Part shown: positions 1 through 54,960 of the stretch, piece by piece
Layout: each line of letters begins with the position of its first letter
Position numbering within the stretch: the first letter of the stretch is position 1
Assembly (NCBI RefSeq): GCF_006345805.1
Contig: NC_042999.1
Coordinates: 133,300,001-133,364,000, forward strand
Direction: 5' to 3'
DNA: 64,000 nt
Source of the DNA: Octopus sinensis
Lineage: Eukaryota
The notes under the pieces: generated by a model
Databases searched by the model: none
Told to the model about the DNA's origin: nothing
Seen by the model: only the letters and a program-made list of their open reading frames with translations
Position numbers and translations under genes: made by a program

Positions 1-975
1 TTTAAGGTCGGTTGGGTATTGTATGTTTATGTAACTTGACATAGTTTTTTTACATGCATTCTTAATATTTTGATTTTTATGGATTTGAGGAGACCGTAGA
101 AGTATCTAGTCTTGCAATCAAAATGGGTTAAGCATTCACATTCCTTGTTAAACCTTTTTTATGTCTGGGAATGAGTGTGTTCAGCTTAGTGATTGTCTTT
201 GATTTACCTTTTAGTAGTGGGGTATATCTTGTAATATAGATAAGTTATCTCTTTTGTAGTGTTCAATATCCATAATAACTATTGCACTTACCTTATCTGC
301 TTCTTTAATTATAATATCATTATTGTTTTTCAGTTCTTGTATAATATCCCACTCCTTTCGACTTGTATTGGGCTTGATCTTAGGGTGTGGAAGATCTTTA
401 TAGGGGATGGTAGAAATATAATCACAAAATTTATCTAAAGCTTTATTCTTGCCTTTCATAGGCTTGTAATTACTCTTGTTTCTTACATTTGAATCGTCCC
501 TGATGTCTTTATCGTGCAATTCCTCAGTGAGGCGTAGTTTTCTACAGAACTGTGAAATGTCGTTTTGTATTTCACTGGATATAGGGTTTTGCGGTGCTGG
601 GGTAAATTTTAGGCCTTTTGACAAAATATTAATTTCTTCTATTGAGAAAGTATTTTTTTTGATAAGCCAATTATCTTCGGTTTTTCATCTTCGGGTTGTA
701 TAATCTGGTGTCGAGTACTCTATTGATTGGATCAAAAACATGATTTTTCAAAGTTTTCCTTTTATTAGTATTTATATATCCGAGGACATTTTCTTTTGTA
801 TCGATTTTGTACGTTTGCTATACTGTATTGTGTTTGTTTCTTTTAAGTCGATATTTTTTATCCATTGTGTATGTCGTGAATATTGAGGAAAGTGCAGTCC
901 AGTCGGAGGGAAAATTTCAATTGTTTTAGTTGGATTATTTCGTTGTCGAAGTAGTCTTGAATTGCCCTTATGGAA
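1..975 (-). mobile_element. Penelope-like element, N-terminal/pre-RT part of ORF (decayed, runs off window start)
   Basis: ORF 211-624(-) reads SKGLKFTPAP..DISQFCRKLRL..NDIIIKEADKVSAIVIMD..Y. Positions 1-200(-) give RYFYGL[P]KIHK with a frameshift. Both are typical PLE pre-RT motifs. Confidence 0.8.
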
Positions 976-6098: not shown

Positions 6099-6505
6099 GG
6101 GCGCAGGAGTGGCTGTGTGGTAAATAGCTTGCTTAACAACCACATGGTTTCGGGTTCATTCCCACTGCATGGCACCTTAGGCAAGTGTCTTCCACTATAG
6201 CCTCATGCCGACCAAAGCCTTGTGAGTAGATTTGGTAGACGGAAACTGAAAGAGGCCCGTCGTATATATGTAGGTGTGTGTGTGTGTGCATGTGTGTGTA
6301 TGTGTGTGTGTTTGTCCTCCCATCATCACTTGACAACCGATGCTGGTGTGTTTACGTCCCCGTAACTTAGCGCTTCGGCAAAAGAGACTGATAGTATAAG
6401 TACTAGGCTTCCAAAGACTAAGTCCTGGGGTCGATTTGCTCGACTAAAGGCGGTGCTCCAGCATGACCGCAATCAAATGACTGAAACAAGTAAAAGAGTA
6501 AAAGA
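6099..6505 (+). mobile_element. tRNA-derived SINE, family A
   Basis: Head GGCGCAGGAGTGGCTGTGTGG..GGTTC.NTCCC, internal TA/TG microsatellite, tail AAGTAAAAGAGTAAAAGA; many copies in the window. Confidence 0.8.
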
Positions 6506-6724
6506 ATATACACGTGTATATATATATATATATTTTATCTCAGTAGATGACCACAGCATCTTGTTTTGGCTACACGCGGGTGGGAGGGGGCTGTTGACAC
6601 AATCGTTTCATTCACAAATTGAATTCGGTGATACCAGTTGCGGATTCTAGCTCGCTCTGATACTGAGTGGAGTTGGTGCCTTCTGGTATCTCAAAATTCA
6701 ATATATAATCATTTATGATTATAG

Positions 6725-6843
6725 TATTCTACGCTGAAGAGAAAAGAAGTTTCGGTAAGATAGAATTATTTATTATTTAATATTTAATATCTAATTCTTA
6801 TGCTTTCCTTAGAACTTGATTTCGAAACGTACGTCCGTGGATA
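6725..6843 (+). ncRNA. Type I hammerhead ribozyme, copy 1 (predicted cleavage after C6835)
   Basis: Stem I TCTACG(6728-33)/CGTGGA(6836-41); core CTGAAGA 6734-40; stem II GAAA-AG-AAGTT / AACTT-GA-TTTC; GAAA 6824-27; stem III AC-GTAC-GT; triplet GTC. Confidence 0.85.
6755..6812 (+). other. GT-AG spliceosomal intron-like insert in hammerhead loop II (present in all 9 copies)
   Basis: Donor TCG|GTAAGA, branch-like CTAAT at 6791-95, pyrimidine tract and acceptor TCTTATGCTTTCCTTAG|. Length 58 nt; its boundaries fall exactly at the tip of stem II. Confidence 0.65.
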
Positions 6844-7328
6844 ACTAAAAAAATGTATGATAGATTGCAGTCAATTCATTCTCTCTTACCTGTTGTGTCT
6901 GCCTTCCAAATGCTGTTTTTACTGAGATCTCCCTTTTTGTAGAAGAAATAGCTATAACCCTTTGACTGCTATTTCTAAATTCGGTATGTGGTAAGGCAAC
7001 TCGTTGCTAAACCCTTATTGCTTAGTATTACTTAAATTTTCCTCGAATGAGGCTTTTACATGCCGAAGACTACTTGGTGTAATTGATAATTTTTCCAAAT
7101 TAATTAATTTCACCCTTCATTATTACGGATAACCATATTTTATCTCAGTAGATGACCACAGCATCTTGTTTTGGCTACACGCGGGTGGGAGGGGGCTGTT
7201 GACACAATCGTTTCATTCACAAATTGAATTCGGTGATACCAGTTGCGGATTCTAGCTCGCTCTGATACTGAGTGGAGTTGGTGCCTTCTGGTATCTCAAA
7301 TTCAATATATAATCATTTATGATTATAG

Positions 7329-7447
7329 TATTCTACGCTGAAGAGAAAAGAAGTTTCGGTAAGATAGAATTATTTATTATTTAATATTTAATATCTAATT
7401 CTTATGCTTTCCTTAGAACTTGATTTCGAAACGTACGTCCGTGGATA
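7329..7447 (+). ncRNA. Hammerhead copy 2 (cleavage after C7439)
   Basis: Same motif as copy 1; core at 7338. Confidence 0.85.
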
Positions 7448-7935
7448 ACTAAAAAAATGTATGATAGATTGCAGTCAATTCATTCTCTCTTACCTGTTTG
7501 TGTCTGCCTTCCAAATGCTGTTTTTACTGAGATCTCCCTTTTTTGTAGAAGAAATAGCTATAACCCTTTGACTGCTATTTCTAAATTCGGTATGTGGTAA
7601 GGCAACTCGTTGCTAAACCCTTATGGCTTAGTATTACTTAAATTTTCCTCGAATGAGGCTTTTACATGCCGAAGACTACTTGGTGTAATTGATAATTTTT
7701 CCAAATTAATTAATTTCACCCTTCATTATTACGGATAACCATATTTTATCTCAGTAGTTGACCACAGCATCTTGTTTTGGCTACACGCGGGTGGGAGGGG
7801 GCTGTTGACACAATCGTTTCATTCACAAATTGAATTCGGTGATACCAGTTGCGGATTCTAGCTCGCTCTGATACTGAGTGGAGTTGGTGCCTTCTGGTAT
7901 CTCAAAATTCAATATATAATCATTTATGATTATAG

Positions 7936-8053
7936 TATTCTACGCTGAAGAGAAAAGAAGTTTCGGTAAGATAGAATTATTTATTATTTAATATTTAATA
8001 TCTAATTCTTATGCTTTCCTTAGAACTTGATTCGAAACGTACGTCCGTGGATA
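7936..8053 (+). ncRNA. Hammerhead copy 3 (cleavage after C8045)
   Basis: Core at 7945; one T missing in the 3' strand of stem II. Confidence 0.8.
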
Positions 8054-8538
8054 ACTAAAAAAATGTATGATAGATTGCAGTCAATTCATTCTCTCTTACC
8101 TGTTTGTGTCTGCCTTCCAAATGCTGTTTTTACTGAGATCTCCCTTTTTTGTAGAAGAAATAGCTATAACCCTTTGACTGCTATTTCTAAATTCGGTATG
8201 TGGTAAGGCAACTCGTTGCTAAACCCTTATTGCTTAGTATTACTTAAATTTTCCTCGAATGAGGCTTTTACATGCCGAAGACTACTTGGTGTAATTGATT
8301 TTTTCCAAATTAATTAATTTACCCTTCATTATTACGGATAACCATATTTTATCTCAGTAGATGACCACAGCATCTTGTTTTGGCTACACGCGGGTGGGAG
8401 GGGGCTGTTGACACAATCGTTTCATTCACAAATTGAATTCGGTGATACCAGTTGCGGATTCTAGCTCGCTCTGATACTGAGTGGAGTTGGTGCCTTCTGG
8501 TATCTCAAAATTCAATATATAATCATTTATGATTATAG

Positions 8539-8653
8539 TATTCTACGCTGAAGAGAAAAGAAGTTTCGGTAAGATAGAATTATTATTATTATATTAATAT
8601 CTAATTCTTATGCTTTCCTTAGAACTTGATTTCGAAACGTACGTCCGTGGATA
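8539..8653 (+). ncRNA. Hammerhead copy 4 (cleavage after C8645)
   Basis: Core at 8548; slightly shorter intron. Confidence 0.85.
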
Positions 8654-9141
8654 ACTAAAAAAATGTATGATAGATTGCAGTCAATTCATTCTCTCTTACC
8701 TGTTTGTGTCTGCCTTCCAAATGCTGTTTTTACTGAGATCTCCCTTTTTTGTAGAAGAAATAGCTATAACCCTTTGACTGCTATTTCTAAATTCGGTATG
8801 TGGTAAGGCAACTCGTTGCTAAACCCTTATTGCTTAGTATTACTTAAATTTTCCTCGAATGAGGCTTTTACATGCCGAAGACTACTTGGTGTAATTGATA
8901 ATTTTTCCAAATTAATTAATTTCACCCTTCATTATTACGGATAACCATATTTTATCTCAGTAGATGACCACAGCATCTTGTTTTGGCTACACGCGGGTGG
9001 GAGGGGGCTGTTGACACAATCGTTTCATTCACAAATTGAATTCGGTGATACCAGTTGCGGATTCTAGCTCGCTCTGATACTGAGTGGAGTTGGTGCCTTC
9101 TGGTATCTCAAAATTCAATATATAATCATTTATGATTATAG

Positions 9142-9259
9142 TATTCTACGCTGAAGAGAAAGAAGTTTCGGTAAGATAGAATTATTTATTATTTAATATT
9201 TAATATCTAATTCTTATGCTTTCCTTAGAACTTGATTTCGAAACGTACGTCCGTGGATA
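9142..9259 (+). ncRNA. Hammerhead copy 5 (cleavage after C9251)
   Basis: Core at 9151; one A missing in the 5' strand of stem II. Confidence 0.8.
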
Positions 9260-9744
9260 ACTAAAAAAATGTATGATAGATTGCAGTCAATTCATTCTCT
9301 CTTACCTGTTTGTGTCTGCCTTCCAAATGCTGTTTTTACTGAGATCTCCCTTTTTTGTAGAAGAAATAGCTATAACCCTTTGACTGCTATTTCTAAATTC
9401 GGTATGTGGTAAGGCAACTCGTTGCTAAACCCTTATTGCTTAGTATTACTTAAATTTTCCTCGAATGAGGCTTTTACATGCCGAAGACTACTTGGTGTAA
9501 TTGATAATTTTTCAAATTAATTAATTTCACCCTTCATTATTACGGATAACCATATTTTATCTCAGTAGTTGACCACAGCATTTGTTTGGCTACACGCGGG
9601 TGGGAGGGGGCTGTTGACACAATCGTTTCATTCACAAATTGAATTCGGTGATACCAGTTGCGGATTCTAGCTCGCTCTGATACTGAGTGGAGTTGGTGCC
9701 TTCTGGTATCTCAAAATTCAATATATAATCATTTATGATTATAG

Positions 9745-9862
9745 TATTCTACGCTGAAGAGAAAAGAAGTTTCGGTAAGATAGAATTATTTATTATTTAA
9801 TATTTAATATCTAATTCTTATGCTTCCTTAGAACTTGATTTCGAAACGTACGTCCGTGGATA
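9745..9862 (+). ncRNA. Hammerhead copy 6 (cleavage after C9854)
   Basis: Core at 9754. Confidence 0.85.
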
Positions 9863-10346
9863 ACTAAAAAAATGTATGATAGATTGCAGTCAATTCATTC
9901 TCTCTTACCTGTTTGTGTCTGCCTTCCAAATGCTGTTTTTACTGAGATCTCCCTTTTTGTAGAAGAAATAGCTATAACCTTTGACTGCTATTTCTAAATT
10001 CGGTATGTGGTAAGGCAACTCGTTGCTAAACCTTATTGCTTAGTATTACTTAAATTTTCCTCGAATGAGGCTTTTACATGCCGAAGACTACTTGGTGTAA
10101 TTGATAATTTTTCCAAATTAATTAATTTCACCCTTCATTATTACGGATAACCATATTTTATCTCAGTAGATGACCACAGCATCTTGTTTTGGCTACACGT
10201 GGGTGGGAGGGGGCTGTTGACACAATCGTTTCATTCACAAATTGAATTCGGTGATACCAGTGCGGATTCTAGCTCGCTCTGATACTGAGTGGAGTTGGTG
10301 CCTTCTGGTATCTCAAAATTCAATATATAATCATTTATGATTATAG

Positions 10347-10462
10347 TATTCTACGCTGAAGAGAAAAGAAGTTTCGGTAAGATAGAATTATTATTATTAA
10401 ATTTAATATCTAATTCTTATGCTTTCCTTAGAACTTGATTTCGAAACGTACGTCCGTGGATA
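10347..10462 (+). ncRNA. Hammerhead copy 7 (cleavage after C10454)
   Basis: Core at 10356. Confidence 0.85.
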
Positions 10463-10948
10463 ACTAAAAAAATGTATGATAGATTGCAGTCAATTCATTC
10501 TCTTACCTGTTTGTGTCTGCCTTCCAAATGCTGTTTTTACTGAGATCTCCCTTTTTTGTAGAAGAAATAGCTATAACCCTTTGACTGCTATTTCTAAATT
10601 CGGTATGTGGTAAGGCAACTCGTTGCTAAACCCTTATTGCTTAGTATTACTTAAATTTTCCTCGAATGAGGCTTTTACATGCCGAAGACTACTTGGTGTA
10701 ATTGATAATTTTTCCAAATTAATTAATTTCACCCTTCATTATTACGGATAACCATATTTTATCTCAGTAGATGACCACAGCATCTTGTTTTGGCTACACG
10801 CGGGTGGGAGGGGGCTGTTGACACAATCGTTTCATTCACAAATTGAATTCGGTGATACCAGTTGCGGATTCTAGCTCGCTCTGATACTGAGTGGAGTTGG
10901 TGCCTTCTGGTATCTCAAAATTCAATATATAATCATTTATGATTATAG

Positions 10949-11066
10949 TATTCTACGCTGAAGAGAAAAGAAGTTTCGGTAAGATAGAATTATTTATTAT
11001 TTAATATTTAATATCTAATTCTTATGCTTCCTTAGAACTTGATTTCGAAACGTACGTCCGTGGATA
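10949..11066 (+). ncRNA. Hammerhead copy 8 (cleavage after C11058)
   Basis: Core at 10958. Confidence 0.85.
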
Positions 11067-11554
11067 ACTAAAAAAATGTATGATAGATTGCAGTCAATTC
11101 ATTCTCTCTACCTGTTTGTGTCTGCCTTCCAAATGCTGTTTTTACTGGGATCTCCCTTTTTGTAGAAGAAATAGCTATAACCTTTGACTGCTATTTCTAA
11201 ATTCGGTATGTGGTAAGGCAACTCGTTGCTAAACCCTTATTGCATAGTATTACTTAAATTTTCCTCGAATGAGGCTTTTACATGCCGAAGACTACTTGGT
11301 GTAATTGATAATTTTTCCAAATTAATTAATTTCACCCTTCATTATTACGGATAACATATTTTATCTCAGTAGATGACCACAGCATCTTGTTTTGGCTACA
11401 CGCGGGTGGGAGGGGGCTGTGTTGACACAATCGTTTCATTCACAAATTGAATTCGGTGATACCAGTTGCGGATTCTAGCTCGCTCTGATACTGAGTGGAG
11501 TTGGTGCCTTCTGGTATCTCAAAATTCAATATATAATCATTTATGATTATAGTA

Positions 11555-11671
11555 TATTCTACGCTGAAGAGAAAAGAAGTTTCGGTAAGATAGAATTATT
11601 TATTATAATATTTAATATCTAATTCTTATGCTTTCCTTAGAACTTGATTTCGAAACGTACGTCCGTGGATA
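11555..11671 (+). ncRNA. Hammerhead copy 9 (cleavage after C11663)
   Basis: Core at 11564. Confidence 0.85.
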
Positions 11672-11852
11672 ACTAAAAAAATTATGATAGATTGCAGTCA
11701 ATTCATTCTCTCTTACCTGTTTGTGTCTGCCTTCAAATGCTGTTTTTACTGAGATCTCCCTTTTTTGTAGAAGAAATAGCTATAACCCTTTGACTGCTAT
11801 TTCTAAATTCGGTATGTGGTAAGGCAACTCGTTGCTAAACCCTTATTGCTTA

Positions 11853-11886
<34 letters not shown>

Positions 11887-11942: not shown

Positions 11943-13314
11943 ACGCACGTATATATTCATAGAGATATTGACATATATACTCAAGCATATGCAAATACGT
12001 ATATGTACATGCATATGTTGTGTATTTATAGCTGATTATAGATGTGACTGGTTATTACAGAACTGACATAACTGTTTGCTTGTAATCTATCAACTGTTAA
12101 TGATACTTCGTTCTTATATAGAGATGTGTGTGTATGTATGTGTGTGTGTGTATGCGTGTGCCTCTGTGTGTGTGTGTGTGTGTATGTGTACCACACAGAT
12201 GCTCTTTGCTAAACTCACAAAGCACTAGACGATGCGAGGTTATAGTAAAGGACATTGCCACTGAACTGAACTGGGGGCTACGTCCATTACGAAGTGAACT
12301 TCTTAACCACAGACCCATATCTGAGTCTATAACACTAATCAGGGAATAATAGATAAACGCAGGATAGCGGCAAGTGTCAAACGTTCTAGTCGTAAGTCCT
12401 GTGAGAAAAAATATTTCTGCGAATTTTTCTAAAATAATAAATTATCAGTGATAAAACAGGAATCGACTTAGACCCTCCCTTAAAAATTACTGGCATAAGC
12501 TGAAATTTGAAACAATTTCACTTGTCTGAAAGACAGCAATCCTACGATTTCAAATTATTTAATTACTTAAATAATAAAAAAAATTATGTGAAAAATAAAA
12601 GAGCCATAATATCTTTTATAGACATATACACACATGCTACAAGTTAGAGTGAATGGGGTGACCAATCATATATAGGAGAAACACCAGTAACCAACTGGTA
12701 CTGATCATATCGACCCCAAATGAAAACAATTTATGTATTTATATATGCACGCATTTATATGAATGTACGTATGTATGTCATTCTTCAGTTTTATTTCATG
12801 ATTTCTTGCCAATAGAGAAAGAGCCGGTTTCTACATTAGATCCAAAGCTTCTTCATTGGCAGTTCAACATCAACAACAGGGTACTTTTGAGTGTATGTAT
12901 GTTAGTATGTATGAATACGTACAGATTTGTGTCTTGTTTTAGGTATGAATTCTCATGCATAAAGTTGCTTATCTAGACAAGTACTTATGTACTTAAATGA
13001 AAAACTTCTGGAATGTTTTACAGATTTTTACAGTTCCAGTGATGGGTTGACTCTATAATATTCCAATCAGCTTTCACCTTCCTGCTTTTGAGAAGGTTAA
13101 TTTCTCAAGATAGGTATTTAGATGGTAATTACAGGTATAAACGTGAACCTTTAATCAGGGTAGAGAAACTGCAAACTTCTCAATAGTTCAGGGTAGGTAT
13201 TTTCTTCTTCACTTTAGCTTTATGTTAACATTTGCATGTATGTATGTATGTATGTATGTATGTATGTATGTATGTATGTATGTATGTATGTATGTATGTA
13301 TGTATGTATGTGTG

Positions 13315-20224: not shown

Positions 20225-21131
20225 TGTTTCTTTATTAGCCACACAGGGCTGCACACAGATAGAACAATTACAAGGTAGAGCTTTTCTTTTGAAGGTTTAA
20301 AAAAAAAAAAAAAAAATAATAAAATAATAAAAAAAACAAATAAAATAAAATAAAAAGGGGGGGGGGGTCGATCAAAAGGGATCGTAAAAGGAGAGAAAGA
20401 GGACAAAAAAGGGGGGGGGGTTAAAAAAAAAGGGGAGAGGAAAAAAAAATTGATCAATAGGGATCGTTATCACAGAAATGTCAATATGAAGTGTAAAGGG
20501 GAGGACAGGTGAGGTTTACTCGTGGAAAGAAAAGCCTACGGAAAAGACCACGGTAACCTCGGTCAATGAAGTCACATGTTATATTTCTTTTTTTTTTTTT
20601 GCAAATAAGCAACTCTCTGTATTAATTTTTACGGTTCATAGAATCATAGTCAAGGTGGCTTCGTCATTCATACGTGCCATCCTTGCTACATTCACCCATC
20701 TTTTTTTTAAAACATTCACTAGACAAAACTTGCCTCTCTACTCTCACTTTTTTCTTCAAGTGATACTTGAAGAAGTTGATGAGAGATTGACCAGAGAGGA
20801 AAGTGTTTGTCTCTAATCCTTTCAGACGCGTCCACCAGATACATTCTTTCGCCATAGCCACAAGTATGATAAAAATAGCTCTTCCTTCCCGTTTGAAGGA
20901 AGGAGGCGTGACGATATTAACGATAGACTCGGCTGATAAACCGACACGTCCCACACGTGACAGCAGTCGTTCGACATAAGCCCACAGGTGGGAAATTGCT
21001 GGACACTGCACGATTGCGTGCAGAGCGGTTTCGTCGCTCTGCCCGCATCTCGGGCAGGTCGGCCCCGTGTTTCTCGAGCCATGCCTATAGAGCTTATCCC
21101 GAACGGGTAGCGCTTCTCGGTAGCACCGCCA
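20224..21131 (-). mobile_element. 5'-truncated Tx1/L1-clade LINE (zf-RVT C-terminus plus 3' UTR) inserted in (TATC)n
   Basis: [36 protein letters not shown] is a zf-RVT CCHC motif; flanked by (GATA)n on both sides. Confidence 0.8.
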
Positions 21132-21171
21132 TAGATAGATAGACTGGTAGATAGATAGATAGATAGACTGG

Positions 21172-21216
<45 letters not shown>

Positions 21217-21217
21217 T

Positions 21218-21278
<61 letters not shown>

Positions 21279-21949
21279 TTGTTTACATGTGTGTTCATCT
21301 GCATACATACATGCATACTTACATATGTGCTCGTCCAGAGGTGCACATAATGCACATGCAAAATAAAACACAGATGCAGGTTGTTTGTATATGTTATAAT
21401 ATATTTCTGTTTATATTATAAATATCATATATTGCTGTATACACAAGTGTTTGCGAATTTAAGATATGCAACAGTCGTGAAAAGATACATATTGAAGTAT
21501 AGTTGACGTATGACATATTACATATGCATTATCATATAAACAAGTGCAGTGTATACTTATATTCAGAATACATTTCGAACAATATTTACGCAAAAATATA
21601 ACCTGAAAGTAGCACAGATATACATACATATACTCTATATTATATCGGATGTGTTAAGACATGTAGCACATATATATATACATATAGATACACACATATA
21701 TTCACCAGTGGATATATGCATTTAGAATATTACATATGAGCATAGGAATACGAACGTTGGCACATTCACCTATACGCGTCTGTTTGAGAGTTTTATGCAT
21801 GAATATGTATATTTGCGTATGTGCTATGTGAACGTGTATATAAATGGATATATTGTATGTACGCATATACACATGCACACTCGCACACATGCTCATATAT
21901 ATACATCTGTACATATATCTGTATATATATATATATATATATGTGTGTG

Positions 21950-35557: not shown

Positions 35558-37544
35558 AAATATTATTAGAGACAAAACCACTATTTTGCAAAACAAACAA
35601 GGAAAGACTTAATCAATACATAAAATTTTAATAAATAGTCAAAAAAACCGCCACTACAATCGTTATATATATATGTATATATATAAGGGTGTTATGAGCG
35701 CTTCTAGGACACATATTCTATAGAAACTCAACAAAGACTTAAAGATGGAGAAGAAAAGCTGTTAAAAGTTTTAAAAGAATTTAATCAATGCATACGATCG
35801 TTTCGAACGGTAATATTCACATGTAAATAACATGGTAAAAAAAATTGAAATTAATTTAATTATAATTAAATTAATTGCATATTACTGTTCTCCTCAGTAC
35901 GAAAAAAGAATACGTCAAAAAATACACCAGAAAAATATATTGTTACAGAAGAGTAGATGGAGTGAATGTCACATAACATATTCGGATATACATAATATCC
36001 TTATGTACGATAAAAACATGCTAAGGTAGTGTTGTTGAGTCCAGTTGTATATGAACTAAAACTCTCCATAAACATCTTCAGGACAACATTGCCCTTCTTT
36101 GACTTCAAAAGTTAGATAACTTCCAAAAGGATATATAAAATTACTAGCCTCTTCTCTTTTCGTAAATGTCTAAGTTTTATATGTCGCCGAAATCAATGAA
36201 GAATAATGATCTGGCGAAGATAGTTAACGTAGTAAAAACACGTATTCACAATTGGTCTTGTTACCAGAATGAATATATGACTATCATTTCTATCAGAGTA
36301 AGAAACATGGCAGTGTCCTCCCCATTGGCACGATATTTGTAGTGCTCCAATGCAAACCGACGATTCGTAGATCACCTTATCTATGAATCTCCGTTTCCCA
36401 GTTTCGAAATCAGCTTTCTAATTTAACGGCATAAATTCTGCAACAGTTACTGATACATAAATAGAATTTTTGTTTCATGTGGGATTATGCTATATATCAA
36501 TCGATTTTATTCCTACAACGTTGGATAAATTCCTTAGCCATACTCTGTAGTAAATATCAGCATCATATTTTTCAGACAAAAACTCCTGCTACCACTGTCA
36601 TTATTACAGACATGTGCACCTCTCGGTAGTCATCTGATTTGTCAGAAATAGTAGCAAATTTTTCTCAGATCAAACCCTGCGGTTTTAGAAAAGGTTTTGT
36701 TGATTAATATAGTTTTGATTTCCTTGTGCATATACATGAGAGAAGGTCACAACTAGAAAACATTTTTCATCATATGGCAACTAGATCAACATTGAGCTGA
36801 GACTAAACAATAATGATAGCCTTTGTAATACAGGTAGAAAGCCTTATTTTATCGACACTGAAAGAATGAAGGGCAAAGTCGATTTCGGTGGAATTTGAAC
36901 TCAGGATATAAAAGTAGACGAAATACCTATTTCTTTACTACCCACAAGGGGCTAAACACAGAGAGGACAAATAAGGACAGACAAACGGATTAAGTCGATT
37001 GCATCGACCCCAGTGCGTAACTGGTACTTAATTTATTGACCCCGAAAGGATGAAAGGCAAAGTCGACCTTGGCGGAATTTGAACTCAGAATGTAACGGCA
37101 GACGAAATACCACTAAGCATTTTGTCAAACGTGCTAACAGTTCTGCTTGCTCGCCGCCTTATTAGGAATTAGCATTAAACAAACATAGAAATCTGAGAGT
37201 CATTAATAATTCTTCACATAAGACTTTTAGTAGTTTCTCATTTCATTTTCTTTTATCGCCAGCAACAAGAATAACCGTAATAATATTCTTAGCTGGAGAC
37301 TGAACATGTTGACTCAATCAACTACATTCTTAACAATTTCCAAACCCCTTTCATAGCCTTATAAAATGTATTTCAAGATATACAACATATTTAACATACA
37401 TGATGGTCACGATTGTGATGCCTTTGATCAGAGGTCTACGCAATGAAGGTTGTTCTGAGATATAGCGCTTTGTCCGAAATACTGACAATACTGTCAGCTC
37501 GCTGCCTAAACACTGATGATAACAAAAACATATACGGCAATAGA

Positions 37545-38625
37545 GGCGACGAGCTGGCAGAAACGTTAGCACTCCGGGCGAAATGCTCAGCGGTACTTCG
37601 TCTGCCGCTACGTTCTGAGTTCAAATTCCGCCGAAGTCGACTTTGCCTTTCATCCTTTCGGAGTCGATTAAATAAGTACCAGTTACGCACTAGGGTCGAT
37701 TTAATCGACTTAATCCGTTTGTCTGTCCTTGTTTGTCCCCTCTGTGTGTAGCCCCTTGTGGGTAGTAAAGAAATAGGTATTTCGTCTGCCGTTGCGTTCT
37801 GAGCTCAAATTCCACCGAGGTCGACTTTGTCATTCATCCTTTCAGGGTCGATAAAATAAGTACCAGTTACGCACTGGGGTCGATATAATCGACTTAATCC
37901 GTTTGTCTGTCTTTGTTTGTCCCCTCTGTGTGTAGCCCCTTGTGGGTAGTAAAGAAATAGGTATTTCGTCTGCCGTTACGTGCTGAGCTCAAATTTCACC
38001 GAGGTCGACTTTGTCATTCATCCTTTCAGGGTCGATAAAATAAGTACCAGTTACGCACTGGGGTCGATATAATCGACTTAATCCGTTTGTTTGTCCTTGT
38101 TTGTCCCCTCTGTGTTTAGCCCCATGTGGGTAATAAAGAAATAGGTATTTCGTCTGCCATTACATTCTGAGTTCAAATTCCGCCGAGGTCGACTTTGCTA
38201 TTTATCCTTTCAGGGTCGATTAAATAAGTACCAGTTACGCACTGGGGTCGATGTAATCGACTTAATCCGTTTGTCTGTCCCTGTTTGCTCTCTCTGTGTT
38301 TAGACCCTTGTGGGTAGTAAAGAAATAGGTATTTCGTCCATCTGAACGTTCTGAGTTCAAATCCCGCCGAGTTCAAATTTCGTCTGCGTTATATTCTGAG
38401 CTCAAATTCCGCCGAGATCGATCATGCTTTTCATCCTTTCGGGGTCGATAAATTAATGACCAGTTATGCACTGGGGTCGATATAATCGACTTAATCCGTT
38501 TGTCTGTCCTTGTTTGCACCCTCTGTGTTTAGCCCCTTGTGGGCAATAAAGAGTACCTAGGTTGATGTAATCGACTTGCCCCTTCCCCCAAAATTTCAGG
38601 CTTTGTGCCTATAGTAGAAAAAAAT
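37545..38625 (+). mobile_element. SINE family B head followed by tandem 184-bp body units
   Basis: Junction AAAGAAATAG|GTATTTCGTC at 37777, 37961, 38145 and 38329 (184-bp spacing). Confidence 0.85.
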
Positions 38626-54448: not shown

Positions 54449-54570
54449 GCACACAAACAAACAAAAGGAAAGAGGAGATAAAAAACGAAAGACAAAGAAC
54501 ATACATGTGTGTGTGCGTGTGCATATTTACTGTATTTAAATATGCTTGTCATATATAGATATATATATAT

Positions 54571-54817
54571 AAAAGGGCTAGTAAAATAAATTACTTTGCC
54601 GCATACGAACTATTAGAAATAGCAGCTAAAAAACGTTTTTTAAAGCTATTTCTAATACTTAAAGAAATCTCTCTCTATAGTGTTTGCTAATTCAAATCTA
54701 AGCAAAACTATATAGAGAGATTTTCTTTAATTATTAGAAATAGCTTTAAAAAGTTTTTTAGCGCTATTTCTAATGATTCAGTATGCGGCAAAGTAATTTA
54801 TTTTACTAAGCCCTTTT
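54571..54817. mobile_element. Foldback/MITE-like palindrome flanked by TA
   Basis: The whole ~250 bp is an imperfect inverted repeat (AAAAGGGCTAGTAAAATAAATTACTTTGCCGCATAC / GTATGCGGCAAAGTAATTTATTTTACTAAGCCCTTTT). Confidence 0.75.
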
Positions 54818-54911
54818 ATATATGTAATAATTTGAATTCGCCTTGAATGGTCCCTTTGCATACTGAACACTTTGTGGAATTGATTACTAATTAATATTTG
54901 CCTCATTGTTG

Positions 54912-54960
<49 letters not shown>

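What the first reader, a model, noticed from the sequence alone, without database searches (positions are those of the whole stretch)
6734..6835. A spliceosomal-type intron sits exactly in loop II of the hammerhead (intron-split ribozyme)
Seen: between the two strands of stem II (GAAAAGAAGTT-TCG and AACTTGATTTC) lies a 58-nt segment that begins GTAAGA, contains CTAAT and ends TCTTATGCTTTCCTTAG. Excising it gives a compact hairpin: 4 bp, a 2x2 internal loop, 5 bp and a TCG loop. Donor, branch and acceptor are kept in all nine copies, and variation is mostly in the AT-rich middle. Established: PLEs are unusual retroelements in that they retain introns, and stem II/loop II affects hammerhead activity. 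Inference: splicing may switch or tune self-cleavage, for example letting intron-retaining RNA serve as the retrotransposition template while spliced RNA is processed to circles. This would couple the spliceosome to a ribozyme.
Basis: partly seen in the sequence, partly recalled or inferred. Interest (0 to 1): 0.9.

Follow-up and report, generated by a model that had tools for sequence, protein, structure and literature searches.

The report
Hammerhead ribozyme with intron-like stem extension
A self-cleaving hammerhead ribozyme repeated nine times in an octopus tandem repeat carries a 58-base piece in its second stem that looks like a short intron, but it more likely is a folded stem extension left by a local duplication of the ribozyme, and no RNA data could be reached to test splicing.

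Summary
Window 6734-6835 is a type I minimal hammerhead ribozyme (HHR), one of nine in a ~604-bp tandem array (about 6530-11883) inserted into (TA)n in an Octopus genome. A 54-58-nt segment (6755-6812) at the tip of helix II has GTAAGA, CTAAT 18 nt from the end, a pyrimidine tract and TAG.

The intron reading is unproven, and the indirect evidence leans against it:
- The segment folds as a coaxial extension of helix II (3 of 500 shuffles fold as well), and all three splice signals are base-paired inside it.
- With the segment in place, the HHR fold is predicted at P≈0.95. With it removed, P≈0, because the junction creates a competing hairpin.
- A diverged O. sinensis relative of the same element has a compact HHR. 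The "intron" plus the helix II 3' strand aligns collinearly with that relative's own HHR and downstream flank, so GGTAAGA sits where it has GCTGATGA.
- Three other octopus HHR-like motifs have helix II of 55-86 nt without a usable GT..AG.

No RNA data or other copies of this family could be reached. I put splicing in vivo at about 0.25-0.3.

The parts
6530..11883 (+). Tandem array of ~8.85 units of 600-606 bp (non-LTR retrozyme-like). It starts at unit position ~310 and ends at ~220, with (TA)n on both sides.
   Evidence: unit alignment and boundaries; nine 3' halves. GC is 35%. No stop-free stretch exceeds 60 aa (ORFs). The monomer RNA folds at -169 kcal/mol against -130±4.5 for shuffles, z=-8.6.
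6722..6733 (+). Helix I 5' strand (TA GTATTCTACG)
   Evidence: It pairs with 6836-6847 as 6 bp, a 2x2 loop and 4 bp. P is 0.84-0.99 in three of four constructs and 0.35-0.39 in the 222-nt construct. G-C to U-A and U-A to C-G changes relative to the L001 relative fit this helix (read).
6734..6740 (+). Hammerhead core box CUGAAGA (C3-A9)
6741..6754 (+). Helix II 5' strand GAAAAGAAGTT (4 bp, A.A/G.G 2x2 loop, 5 bp) followed by TCG
6755..6812 (+). The 58-nt segment. It is intron-like (GTAAGA, CTAAT, TTTCCTTAG) and also a structured distal extension of helix II.
   Evidence: It is collinear with the compact HHR of the O. sinensis relative.
6813..6823 (+). Helix II 3' strand AACTTGATTTC
   Evidence: Together with the preceding CCTTAG and the following GA of the core, it matches CCTTAGCATTTGATTTTCGA, which lies downstream of the L001 HHR (17 of 20; 2 of 1000 shuffles score as well).
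6824..6835 (+). Core GAA, then helix III ACGUACGU (2 bp plus palindromic GUAC loop), then cleavage-site C17
   Evidence: The 8-nt palindrome forms an intermolecular 8-bp helix at -11.2 kcal/mol, as in dimeric minimal HHRs (PMC4209133, PMC7229834).
6836..6847 (+). Helix I 3' strand CGTGGATAACTA
7338..7439 (+). HHR copy 2 (segment 7359-7416)
7945..8045 (+). HHR copy 3 (segment 7966-8023). A 1-nt deletion in the helix II 3' strand is predicted to unpair the base of helix II.
8548..8645 (+). HHR copy 4 (segment 8569-8622, 54 nt)
9151..9251 (+). HHR copy 5 (segment 9171-9228). It has a 1-nt deletion in the helix II 5' A-run.
9754..9854 (+). HHR copy 6 (segment 9775-9831, 57 nt; T-run one base shorter)
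10356..10454 (+). HHR copy 7 (segment 10377-10431, 55 nt)
10958..11058 (+). HHR copy 8 (segment 10979-11035, 57 nt)
11564..11663 (+). HHR copy 9 (segment 11585-11640, 56 nt)

Best explanation
The region is the self-cleaving hammerhead of a non-coding, Penelope-like-element-related tandem retroelement (a non-LTR 'retrozyme') in an Octopus genome.

The ribozyme is built to work with the 58-nt segment in place:
- The segment is the distal part of an unusually long helix II.
- It zips into an imperfect hairpin coaxial with the 4 bp + 2x2 loop + 5 bp base of helix II.
- This stabilises the catalytic fold against a competing hairpin.

Inferred life cycle: multimeric transcripts self-cleave after GUC, probably as dimers through the palindromic helix III ACGUACGU. 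This yields ~604-nt monomers that can be circularised and reverse transcribed. That route would explain why every genomic copy keeps the segment.

Inferred origin: a local duplication or nesting of the hammerhead region, after which the inner copy decayed.
- GGTAAGA sits where a related element has GCTGATGA.
- CCTTAG sits where that element has its helix I 3' strand.
- CTAAT is also found in that element's helix II 3' strand, but about 9 nt out of register in the ungapped alignment.

On this reading the splice-site resemblance is largely a by-product of that ancestry and of a purine-rich 5' arm pairing with a pyrimidine-rich 3' arm.

Shown: the sequence anatomy, the predicted folds, the shuffle statistics and the homology with the compact relative. 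Inferred: self-cleavage, circles, the duplication path, and the absence of appreciable splicing.
For: Hammerhead and array:
- Nine copies of core plus helices at 600-606-bp spacing.
- (TA)n on both flanks.
- Monomer fold z=-8.6.

Structured extension:
- With the helix II arms fixed, the real segment gives -16.6 kcal/mol against -10.1±2.2 for 500 dinucleotide shuffles (z=-3.0; 3 of 500 as good).
- All seven sequence variants keep the same fold, and their indels fall in the apical part of the hairpin.
- The donor GGUAAG pairs with CUUUCC of the pyrimidine tract. The branch CUAAU lies in the 7-bp stem AGAAUUA/UAAUUCU.

Fold with and without the segment:
- P(helix II) is 0.94-0.98 unspliced in two of three constructs (0.42-0.44 in the 222-nt one), against 0.00 spliced in all three.
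- In the spliced form the HHR-compatible fold is -10.7 kcal/mol, against -16.3 for the hairpin GUUUCGAA/UUCGAAAC. In the unspliced form it is -24.1 against -25.2.

Relative with a compact HHR:
- O. sinensis L001 ~2100-2590 is collinear with the unit and ends at the same unit position before (TA)n.
- Its HHR (2342-2386) has a 25-nt helix II.

Collinearity of the segment with that HHR:
- Local alignment score is 42 against 22.6±3.9 (0 of 1000 shuffles).
- An ungapped alignment anchored on CCTTAG puts GATAGAA in register in both sequences. Identity is 44 of 100 against 28.5 expected.

Long helix II without a usable GT..AG in other octopus HHR-like motifs:
- window(-) 35897-35801, 86 nt
- L001(-) 8157-8070, 77 nt
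- L003(+) near 771-845, 55 nt

Against: - The splice signals are complete and correctly spaced. Even allowing for the hairpin dependence, I estimate chance at roughly 1e-4 to 1e-2 per loop.
- PLEs are known to keep functional introns next to their HHR (PMC4209133; PMC8557442).
- The segment is about six times more variable than the rest of the unit (13 of 58 variable columns against 25 of 549). This also fits an intron interior.
- The homology argument rests on one diverged relative. Its 5' half taken alone is weak (74 of 1000 shuffles score as well), and L001's 5' core also matches the outer box of the array HHR.
- The fold predictions ignore tertiary contacts, proteins and co-transcriptional kinetics.
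- The segment on its own is only marginally structured (z=-1.8).
Confidence: 0.55

Rival explanations
1. The segment is a genuine U2-type intron, either inherited from the intron-bearing terminal repeat of a PLE ancestor or created by 'intronisation' of the stem tip, and it is removed from part of the transcripts. Splicing then acts as a switch. Folding predicts that unspliced RNA forms the hammerhead and is cut to unit length, while spliced RNA misfolds and stays uncut.
For: - G|GTAAGA donor in the top 1.2% of GT sites; acceptor in the top 2.9% of AG sites.
- CTAAT with its branch A 18 nt from the 3' end, and no AG in between.
- Only 1 comparable pseudo-intron in 117 kb of background.
- Precedents: the D. 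virilis Penelope intron abuts HHR helix I, and PLE 5'-UTR introns lie in the terminal repeat.
- A 56-nt human intron is used as a splicing model substrate (abstract of 10.1101/784868, listed), so this length is not excluded.
- The fold difference between the two forms is large.
Against: - No transcript evidence is available.
- All three signals are sequestered in a helix predicted at P>0.9.
- The homologous positions in the L001 relative carry CTGATGA, not GT, and the region there is an HHR, not an intron.
- Three other HHR-like motifs with a long helix II have no usable GT..AG.
- The 54-58-nt length is short for a genome with generally long introns (my own knowledge; not measured here).
- No intron-less copy of this family was found, but only about 170 kb of octopod DNA (about 150 kb of it Octopus) was available.
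Confidence: 0.28
2. The array is an inert satellite whose hammerhead no longer works. On this reading, neither the long helix II nor the splice-like signals has any present function. The segment grew by slippage of an AT-rich loop.
For: - Two of the nine copies carry 1-nt deletions in the base of helix II.
- The middle of the segment is ATT-repeat-like and length-variable.
- Minimal HHRs of animal PLEs cleave poorly in vitro (PMC4209133; PMC11167929).
- Rfam models do not score the motif.
Against: - The core is intact in all nine copies, and the helices are well predicted.
- The monomer RNA is far more structured than shuffles (z=-8.6).
- The copies are nearly identical, which points to recent amplification.
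- The Rfam negative is uninformative, because the compact L001 HHR is not scored either.
- The 1-nt homopolymer differences may be assembly errors.
Confidence: 0.12

Closest known systems
Non-LTR retrozymes of animals (tandem repeats with type I hammerheads expressed as circular RNAs; Cervera & de la Peña 2020, PMC7229834; linked to PLE terminal repeats in bioRxiv 10.64898/2026.07.22.740005)
   Same: - Multi-copy head-to-tail array with one type I HHR per unit.
- Low GC (35%) and no coding capacity.
- Highly structured monomer RNA.
- Weak helix III capped by a palindromic tetraloop, as in the amphibian dimeric HHRs.
   Different: - The monomer is ~604 bp, against the described 150-450 bp.
- Helix II is 79-83 nt instead of a short hairpin.
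- Expression and circularity were not tested here.
Minimal hammerheads of Penelope-like elements (Cervera & de la Peña 2014, PMC4209133)
   Same: - The core is conserved.
- Helix III is very short with a palindromic loop that can extend in a dimer.
- Insertion is into (TA)n, as reported for some PLE clades (PMC8557442).
- PLE fragments are present in the window and in related loci.
   Different: - No RT/GIY-YIG open reading frame is attached to this array.
- Helix II is far longer than the ~6 bp described there.
D. virilis Penelope hammerhead next to its 75-nt intron (PMC4209133 Fig. 2C; PMC8557442)
   Same: A spliceosomal(-like) element touches an HHR of a PLE-type element, so that spliced and unspliced RNAs would carry different ribozymes.
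   Different: - There the intron is experimentally known, and its 3' end abuts helix I.
- Here the candidate lies inside helix II, is unverified, and appears homologous to a decayed HHR copy.
Discontinuous hammerhead in mammalian Clec2 3' UTRs (Martick et al. 2008; from my own knowledge, not checked here)
   Same: The two halves of an HHR are separated by a long intervening sequence and still form the core.
   Different: - The intervening sequence there is hundreds of nt, and the HHR sits in an mRNA rather than a repeat.
- No splice signals are involved.
Intronic hammerheads of amniotes (de la Peña & García-Robles 2010; cited in PMC4209133)
   Same: An HHR and the splicing machinery would act on the same transcript.
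   Different: The topology is the reverse: there the ribozyme lies inside an intron, whereas here an intron-like piece lies inside the ribozyme.

Membership tests
Hammerhead ribozyme, type I, minimal (PLE/retrozyme) variant | Conserved core CUGANGA ... GAAA ... N-U-H in the right order | tested here: met
   CTGAAGA, GAA-A and GTC are present in all nine copies, against 0 matches in shuffles.
Hammerhead ribozyme, type I, minimal (PLE/retrozyme) variant | Helices I and II flank the core; helix I is open-ended; internal loops are placed for loop-loop contacts | tested here: met
   - Helix I is 6 bp + 2x2 loop + 4 bp. Helix II is 4 bp + 2x2 loop + 5 bp + extension.
- Pair probabilities are 0.84-1.0 in the 135-nt and 502-nt constructs and about 0.35-0.78 in the 222-nt one.
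- Tertiary contacts were not tested.
Hammerhead ribozyme, type I, minimal (PLE/retrozyme) variant | Short helix III with a palindromic loop that allows a dimeric active form | tested here: met
   ACGUACGU is an 8-nt palindrome. Two copies cofold into an 8-bp helix at -11.2 kcal/mol.
Hammerhead ribozyme, type I, minimal (PLE/retrozyme) variant | Match to the curated Rfam hammerhead covariance models | tested here: inconclusive
   There is no hit at gathering score or at E≤10. The compact octopus HHR in L001 is not scored either, so the models appear not to cover this variant.
Hammerhead ribozyme, type I, minimal (PLE/retrozyme) variant | Site-specific self-cleavage | not testable with these tools
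   This needs in vitro transcription of monomer and dimer constructs.
Non-LTR retrozyme | Head-to-tail repeats, each unit carrying one type I HHR | tested here: met
   There are nine HHRs and eight full units plus two partial ones.
Non-LTR retrozyme | Monomer of about 150-450 bp with GC below 45-50% (PMC7229834) | tested here: not met
   The size criterion is not met, since the monomer is 600-606 bp. The GC criterion is met at 35%.
Non-LTR retrozyme | No protein-coding capacity | tested here: met
   The longest stop-free stretch is 60 aa. The protein search found no homologue.
Non-LTR retrozyme | Expressed as unit-length linear and circular RNA | not testable with these tools
   No RNA data are available. 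The highly structured monomer (z=-8.6) is consistent with this feature.
U2-type spliceosomal intron | GT..AG ends with consensus donor, branch point, pyrimidine tract and no AG between branch and acceptor | tested here: met
   - Donor TCG|GTAAGA is in the top 1.2% of GT sites.
- CTAAT has its branch A 18 nt from the 3' end.
- 10 of 12 bases before TAG are pyrimidines.
- The acceptor is in the top 2.9% of AG sites.
. The scoring matrix was written from memory and is rough.
U2-type spliceosomal intron | Length at or above the species' minimum | tested here: inconclusive
   The segment is 54-58 nt. The Octopus minimum was not found in the literature searches. A 56-nt human intron is used as a splicing model substrate (abstract of 10.1101/784868, listed).
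U2-type spliceosomal intron | Spliced junction present in RNA | not testable with these tools
   No transcriptome search is available. The unit's ORFs are absent from the protein and contig index.
U2-type spliceosomal intron | GT and AG kept at the same position in diverged homologues, or precise intron-less copies | tested here: not met
   - The one relative found (L001) has a compact HHR. At the aligned positions it has GCTGATGA instead of GGTAAGA, though it does keep CCTTAG.
- Other long-helix-II motifs lack a usable GT..AG.
- The sample is small.
Penelope-type terminal-repeat (pLTR) intron | Lies in the terminal repeat / 5' UTR of an element encoding RT and GIY-YIG endonuclease | tested here: inconclusive
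   No autonomous partner with this HHR was found in about 170 kb of octopod sequence. PLE fragments do exist nearby, at window 211-624(-) and in L001.

The most novel reading that the evidence does not exclude
The segment is a real short intron that doubles as the stabilising arm of helix II, so the hammerhead folds and cuts only in unspliced RNA.
- Only intron-containing transcripts would then be trimmed to unit length, circularised and copied back into DNA.
- This would be a built-in mechanism for Penelope-type elements to keep their introns through retrotransposition.
- Spliced transcripts would escape self-cleavage and persist as long RNAs.
- In a tandem array, donor and acceptor could also back-splice to give a 546-nt circle without any ribozyme.
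Probability: 0.22. Interest if true: 0.8.

Novelty: new variant of a known kind. Interest (0 to 1): 0.45.

Why it matters
If the segment is spliced, this would be the first case of a spliceosomal intron inside a ribozyme helix acting as an on/off switch. It would also offer a concrete, testable answer to why Penelope-type retroelements retain introns.

If it is not spliced, which I think more likely, three smaller points remain:
- Octopus minimal hammerheads tolerate helix II of 55-86 nt.
- A hammerhead may be rebuilt around a decayed copy of itself.
- Motif descriptors and Rfam models that assume a short helix II miss such ribozymes.

Either way, the 604-nt unit extends the size range of animal retrozyme-like arrays.

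Tried and rejected
- Rfam scans at gathering score and at E≤10 found no hammerhead. A control on the compact L001 HHR was also negative, so this says nothing about the insert.
- Exact-match scans for the HHR 3' half in viral, prokaryotic-genome and metagenome collections gave 0 hits.
- A gapped core pattern in metagenomes gave 17 hits, of which 16 have 3 or fewer base pairs at the base of helix II, so I judged them chance matches.
- Look-ups of two unit ORFs in the contig index, meant to fish out RNA-seq assemblies, found nothing on record.
- A protein search with concatenated stop-free translations of all frames gave no hit.
- blastn of the unit against six fetched mollusc loci and the rest of the window gave only weak hits. 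One of them led to the L001 relative.
- Two literature searches for the Octopus minimum intron length were not informative.
- MAFFT alignment of the three other long-helix-II motifs misaligned the cores and was not used.
- I considered a transposon insertion as the origin of the segment and rejected it, because I saw no terminal repeats or target duplication at its ends.
- ARAGORN found no tRNA genes in the window.

Full report
**1. What is there**

Window 6734-6835 reads CTGAAGA | GAAAAGAAGTT TCG | 58 nt | AACTTGATTTC | GAA | ACGTACGT | C.
- This is the hammerhead (HHR) core in type I order.
- Helix I is open-ended. TAGTATTCTACG (6722-6733) pairs with CGTGGATAACTA (6836-6847).
- Helix II is closed by the long insert.
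- Helix III is only A-U and C-G, capped by the palindromic loop GUAC.

The same motif occurs nine times on the + strand, 600-606 bp apart, against 0 matches in shuffles.

Aligning the units shows an array of about 8.85 units from about 6530 to 11883.
- It starts at unit position ~310 and ends at ~220.
- It has (TA)n on both sides.
- Copies differ mostly by single-base indels.

Further properties of the unit:
- It is 35% GC.
- It has no stop-free stretch above 60 aa and no protein homologue.
- As RNA it folds far better than shuffles (-169 against -130±4.5 kcal/mol, z=-8.6).

A Penelope-like element (PLE) ORF fragment at window 211-624(-) matches proteins of Octopus sinensis and O. bimaculoides at 47-61% identity, so the window comes from an Octopus genome.

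Taken together this is the architecture of an animal non-LTR retrozyme (PMC7229834), with a larger monomer than described. The HHR is of the minimal PLE or amphibian kind, which is thought to act as a dimer (PMC4209133). Consistent with that, ACGUACGU is an 8-nt palindrome that forms an 8-bp intermolecular helix.

**2. The observation**

- The segment is 6755-6812 in copy 1 and 54-58 nt across copies.
- The donor (TCG|GTAAGA), the branch-like CTAAT and the acceptor CCTTAG are invariant.
- Indels lie in the AT-rich middle, and two copies have a T-run one base shorter.

The nine copies are about 98-99% identical overall, so this conservation amounts to roughly one data point.

With a rough consensus matrix written from memory, the donor is in the top 1.2% of background GT sites and the acceptor in the top 2.9% of AG sites. 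The same unit holds a better donor (7597) and a better acceptor (7549).

In 117 kb of background there are 13 GTAAG...Y-rich-AG pairs 45-100 nt apart, and only one of them has CTRAY. Exact placement at the helix II tip is therefore very unlikely for random sequence.

**3. Evidence that the segment is part of the ribozyme's structure**

In the genomic (unspliced) form, helix II continues through the segment as one imperfect hairpin.
- GG pairs with CC, and AAG with CUU.
- There is a 7-bp stem AGAAUUA/UAAUUCU and an apical stem-loop.

With the helix II arms held fixed and only the segment shuffled, the real sequence gives -16.6 kcal/mol against -10.1±2.2 (z=-3.0). Only 3 of 500 shuffles fold as well.

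All seven sequence variants among the nine copies keep this fold, and their indels fall in the apical part of the hairpin. The higher variability of the segment (13 of 58 variable columns against 25 of 549, p=1e-5) therefore fits a hairpin tip as well as an intron interior.

In this fold the donor pairs with the pyrimidine tract, and the branch motif lies inside the 7-bp stem. Two things follow. The splice signals are occluded. Donor-like and pyrimidine-rich arms are not independent coincidences, because a purine-rich 5' arm forces a pyrimidine-rich 3' arm.

**4. What removal would do**

In context, however, the junction creates UUUCGAAC. Together with the core's UUUCGAAAC this forms an 8-bp hairpin that sequesters G12-A14.
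- Spliced form: the HHR-compatible fold is -10.7 kcal/mol, against an MFE of -16.3.
- Unspliced form: -24.1, against an MFE of -25.2.
- P(helix II) unspliced is 0.94-0.98 in the 135-nt and 502-nt constructs and 0.42-0.44 in the 222-nt one. Spliced, it is 0.00 in all three.

These are thermodynamic predictions only. They still argue that the active ribozyme is the unspliced form. If splicing occurs, it would switch the ribozyme off.

**5. Comparative evidence**

No other copy of this family could be reached directly. Fetching PLE loci from octopod genomes nevertheless gave useful material.

(a) Long helix II elsewhere. Three further minimal HHR-like motifs have a long helix II and no usable GT..AG:
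- window(-) 35897-35801, 86 nt
- O. sinensis L001(-) 8157-8070, 77 nt
- O. bimaculoides L003(+) near 771-845, 55 nt

Two of them share the downstream flank GCATTGATTAAA but have unrelated helix II interiors. Long, variable helix II is thus a feature of octopus HHRs.

(b) A relative with a compact HHR. L001 ~2100-2590 is a diverged solo relative of the array unit.
- It is collinear with the unit and ends at the same unit position before (TA)n.
- Its HHR (CTGATGA, a 25-nt helix II with a U.U base pair, GAAACGTACGTT) is compact.
- Its helix I differs from the array's by G-C to U-A and U-A to C-G changes (read).
- Two 5'-truncated copies of this family also lie in the window at 54551-54822.

(c) Collinearity of the segment with that HHR. 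The array's segment plus its helix II 3' strand aligns with L001's own HHR plus downstream flank.
- Local score is 42 against 22.6±3.9 (0 of 1000 shuffles).
- The 3' anchor is CCTTAGAACTTGA-TTTCGA against CCTTAGCATTTGATTTTCGA (2 of 1000 shuffles as good).
- The 5' piece alone reaches only 74 of 1000.
- An ungapped alignment anchored on CCTTAG brings GATAGAA into register in both sequences. Identity is 44 of 100 against 28.5 expected.

In that register GGTAAGA corresponds to GCTGATGA, the relative's catalytic box, and CCTTAG to its helix I 3' strand. CTAAT also occurs in its helix II 3' strand, but about 9 nt out of register.

The simplest reading is that the array's HHR is a newer outer ribozyme built around a decayed inner copy, whose arms were then selected to zip up. 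This inference rests on one relative, and L001's 5' half also matches the outer box well. I hold it at about 0.5.

**6. Literature context**

- PLEs keep introns, and in D. virilis Penelope the intron's 3' end abuts helix I of the HHR, so spliced and unspliced HHRs differ (PMC4209133).
- PLE 5'-UTR introns lie in the terminal repeat, and (TA)n is a preferred target in some clades (PMC8557442).
- In the Anolis element PAc (a Poseidon-type PLE), the HHR needs the element's protein, and unprocessed RNA is the insertion substrate in vitro (PMC11167929).
- Animal retrozymes are proposed derivatives of PLE terminal repeats (bioRxiv 10.64898/2026.07.22.740005).
- Nothing in the searches describes an intron inside helix II, or octopus HHRs.

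**7. Verdict**

The intron interpretation cannot be decided without RNA data.

Weighing the strong, well-placed signals and the PLE precedent against the structural, energetic and comparative evidence, my estimates are:
- about 0.55 for a structural helix II extension of duplicative origin, not appreciably spliced
- about 0.28 for a genuine intron
- about 0.12 for an inert satellite

The case is a new variant of a known kind (a retrozyme or PLE hammerhead) and a good, cheap target for an RNA-seq junction search.

Noticed in passing
window 35801-35897, minus strand: A second, unrelated minimal hammerhead-like motif. It reads CTGAGGA, then helix II of 86 nt (4 bp, an A.C mismatch, 7 bp and an AT-rich interior with a perfect 28-nt palindrome), then GAA, then AC[GATC]GT-A. 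It is a solo copy with a weak helix I and no AG at the 3' side of the insert. It shares the downstream flank GCATTGATTAAA with an O. bimaculoides motif (L003 near 771-845).
   Followed up: partly
window 54551-54822 (and 54860-54915): Two 5'-truncated copies of the compact-HHR relative family lie head to head as an inverted pair, 92-93% identical to O. sinensis L001 2438-2591. They are followed by a fragment resembling the upstream part of the same element and by (TA)n. This is a PLE-like complex insertion.
   Followed up: partly
L001 2100-2590 (O. sinensis CM016868.1): A solo, diverged relative of the array unit with a compact hammerhead (2342-2386, U.U at the base of helix II). It ends at the same unit position before (TA)n, and a SINE-like repeat follows. 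This suggests a defined 3' end, and possibly a fixed reverse-transcription start, for the family.
   Followed up: partly
window 211-624, minus strand: A PLE ORF fragment (DUF8422-type N-terminal region with an ADK..-type motif) is interrupted by a stop and runs toward the window start. Its listed Octopus matches are 47-61% identical (best hit overall 65%, unnamed source).
   Followed up: partly
window 7549 and 7597 (and the same positions in other units): The unit holds a stronger acceptor-like site (CCCTTTTTTGTAG|A) and a stronger donor-like site (GTG|GTAAGG) than those in the hammerhead. In a tandem transcript these could define other splice or back-splice products. The donor is not conserved in the L001 relative (GCGGCAAAG).
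   Followed up: no
window 6100-6290; also L001 about 2600-2700: A repeat beginning GCGCAGGAGTGGCTGTGTGGTAA... lies just upstream of the array, and a similar one follows the L001 element. From memory it resembles the abundant tRNA-derived octopus SINE. ARAGORN calls no tRNA gene.
   Followed up: no
window 20664-21371, minus strand: An ORF with a zinc-finger-like C-terminal motif (GPTCPRCG...ETALH) that I recognise, from memory, as the C-terminal part of a non-LTR (LINE) reverse transcriptase. It is fused to a TAGA-type microsatellite translation.
   Followed up: no
window 37592-38371: A 184-bp tandem repeat of 4.2 copies at 91% identity, of unknown nature. It contains no hammerhead core.
   Followed up: no
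window 12359-12430, plus strand: A weak match to the Rfam CPEB3 ribozyme model (23.2 bits against a gathering score of 35, E=0.01), just downstream of the array. It is probably chance.
   Followed up: no
array units, e.g. 8030-8045 and 9151-9170: Many differences between units are 1-nt length changes in A or T runs, including in the base of helix II in copies 3 and 5. They could be real or long-read assembly errors. This matters for judging which copies are active.
   Followed up: no
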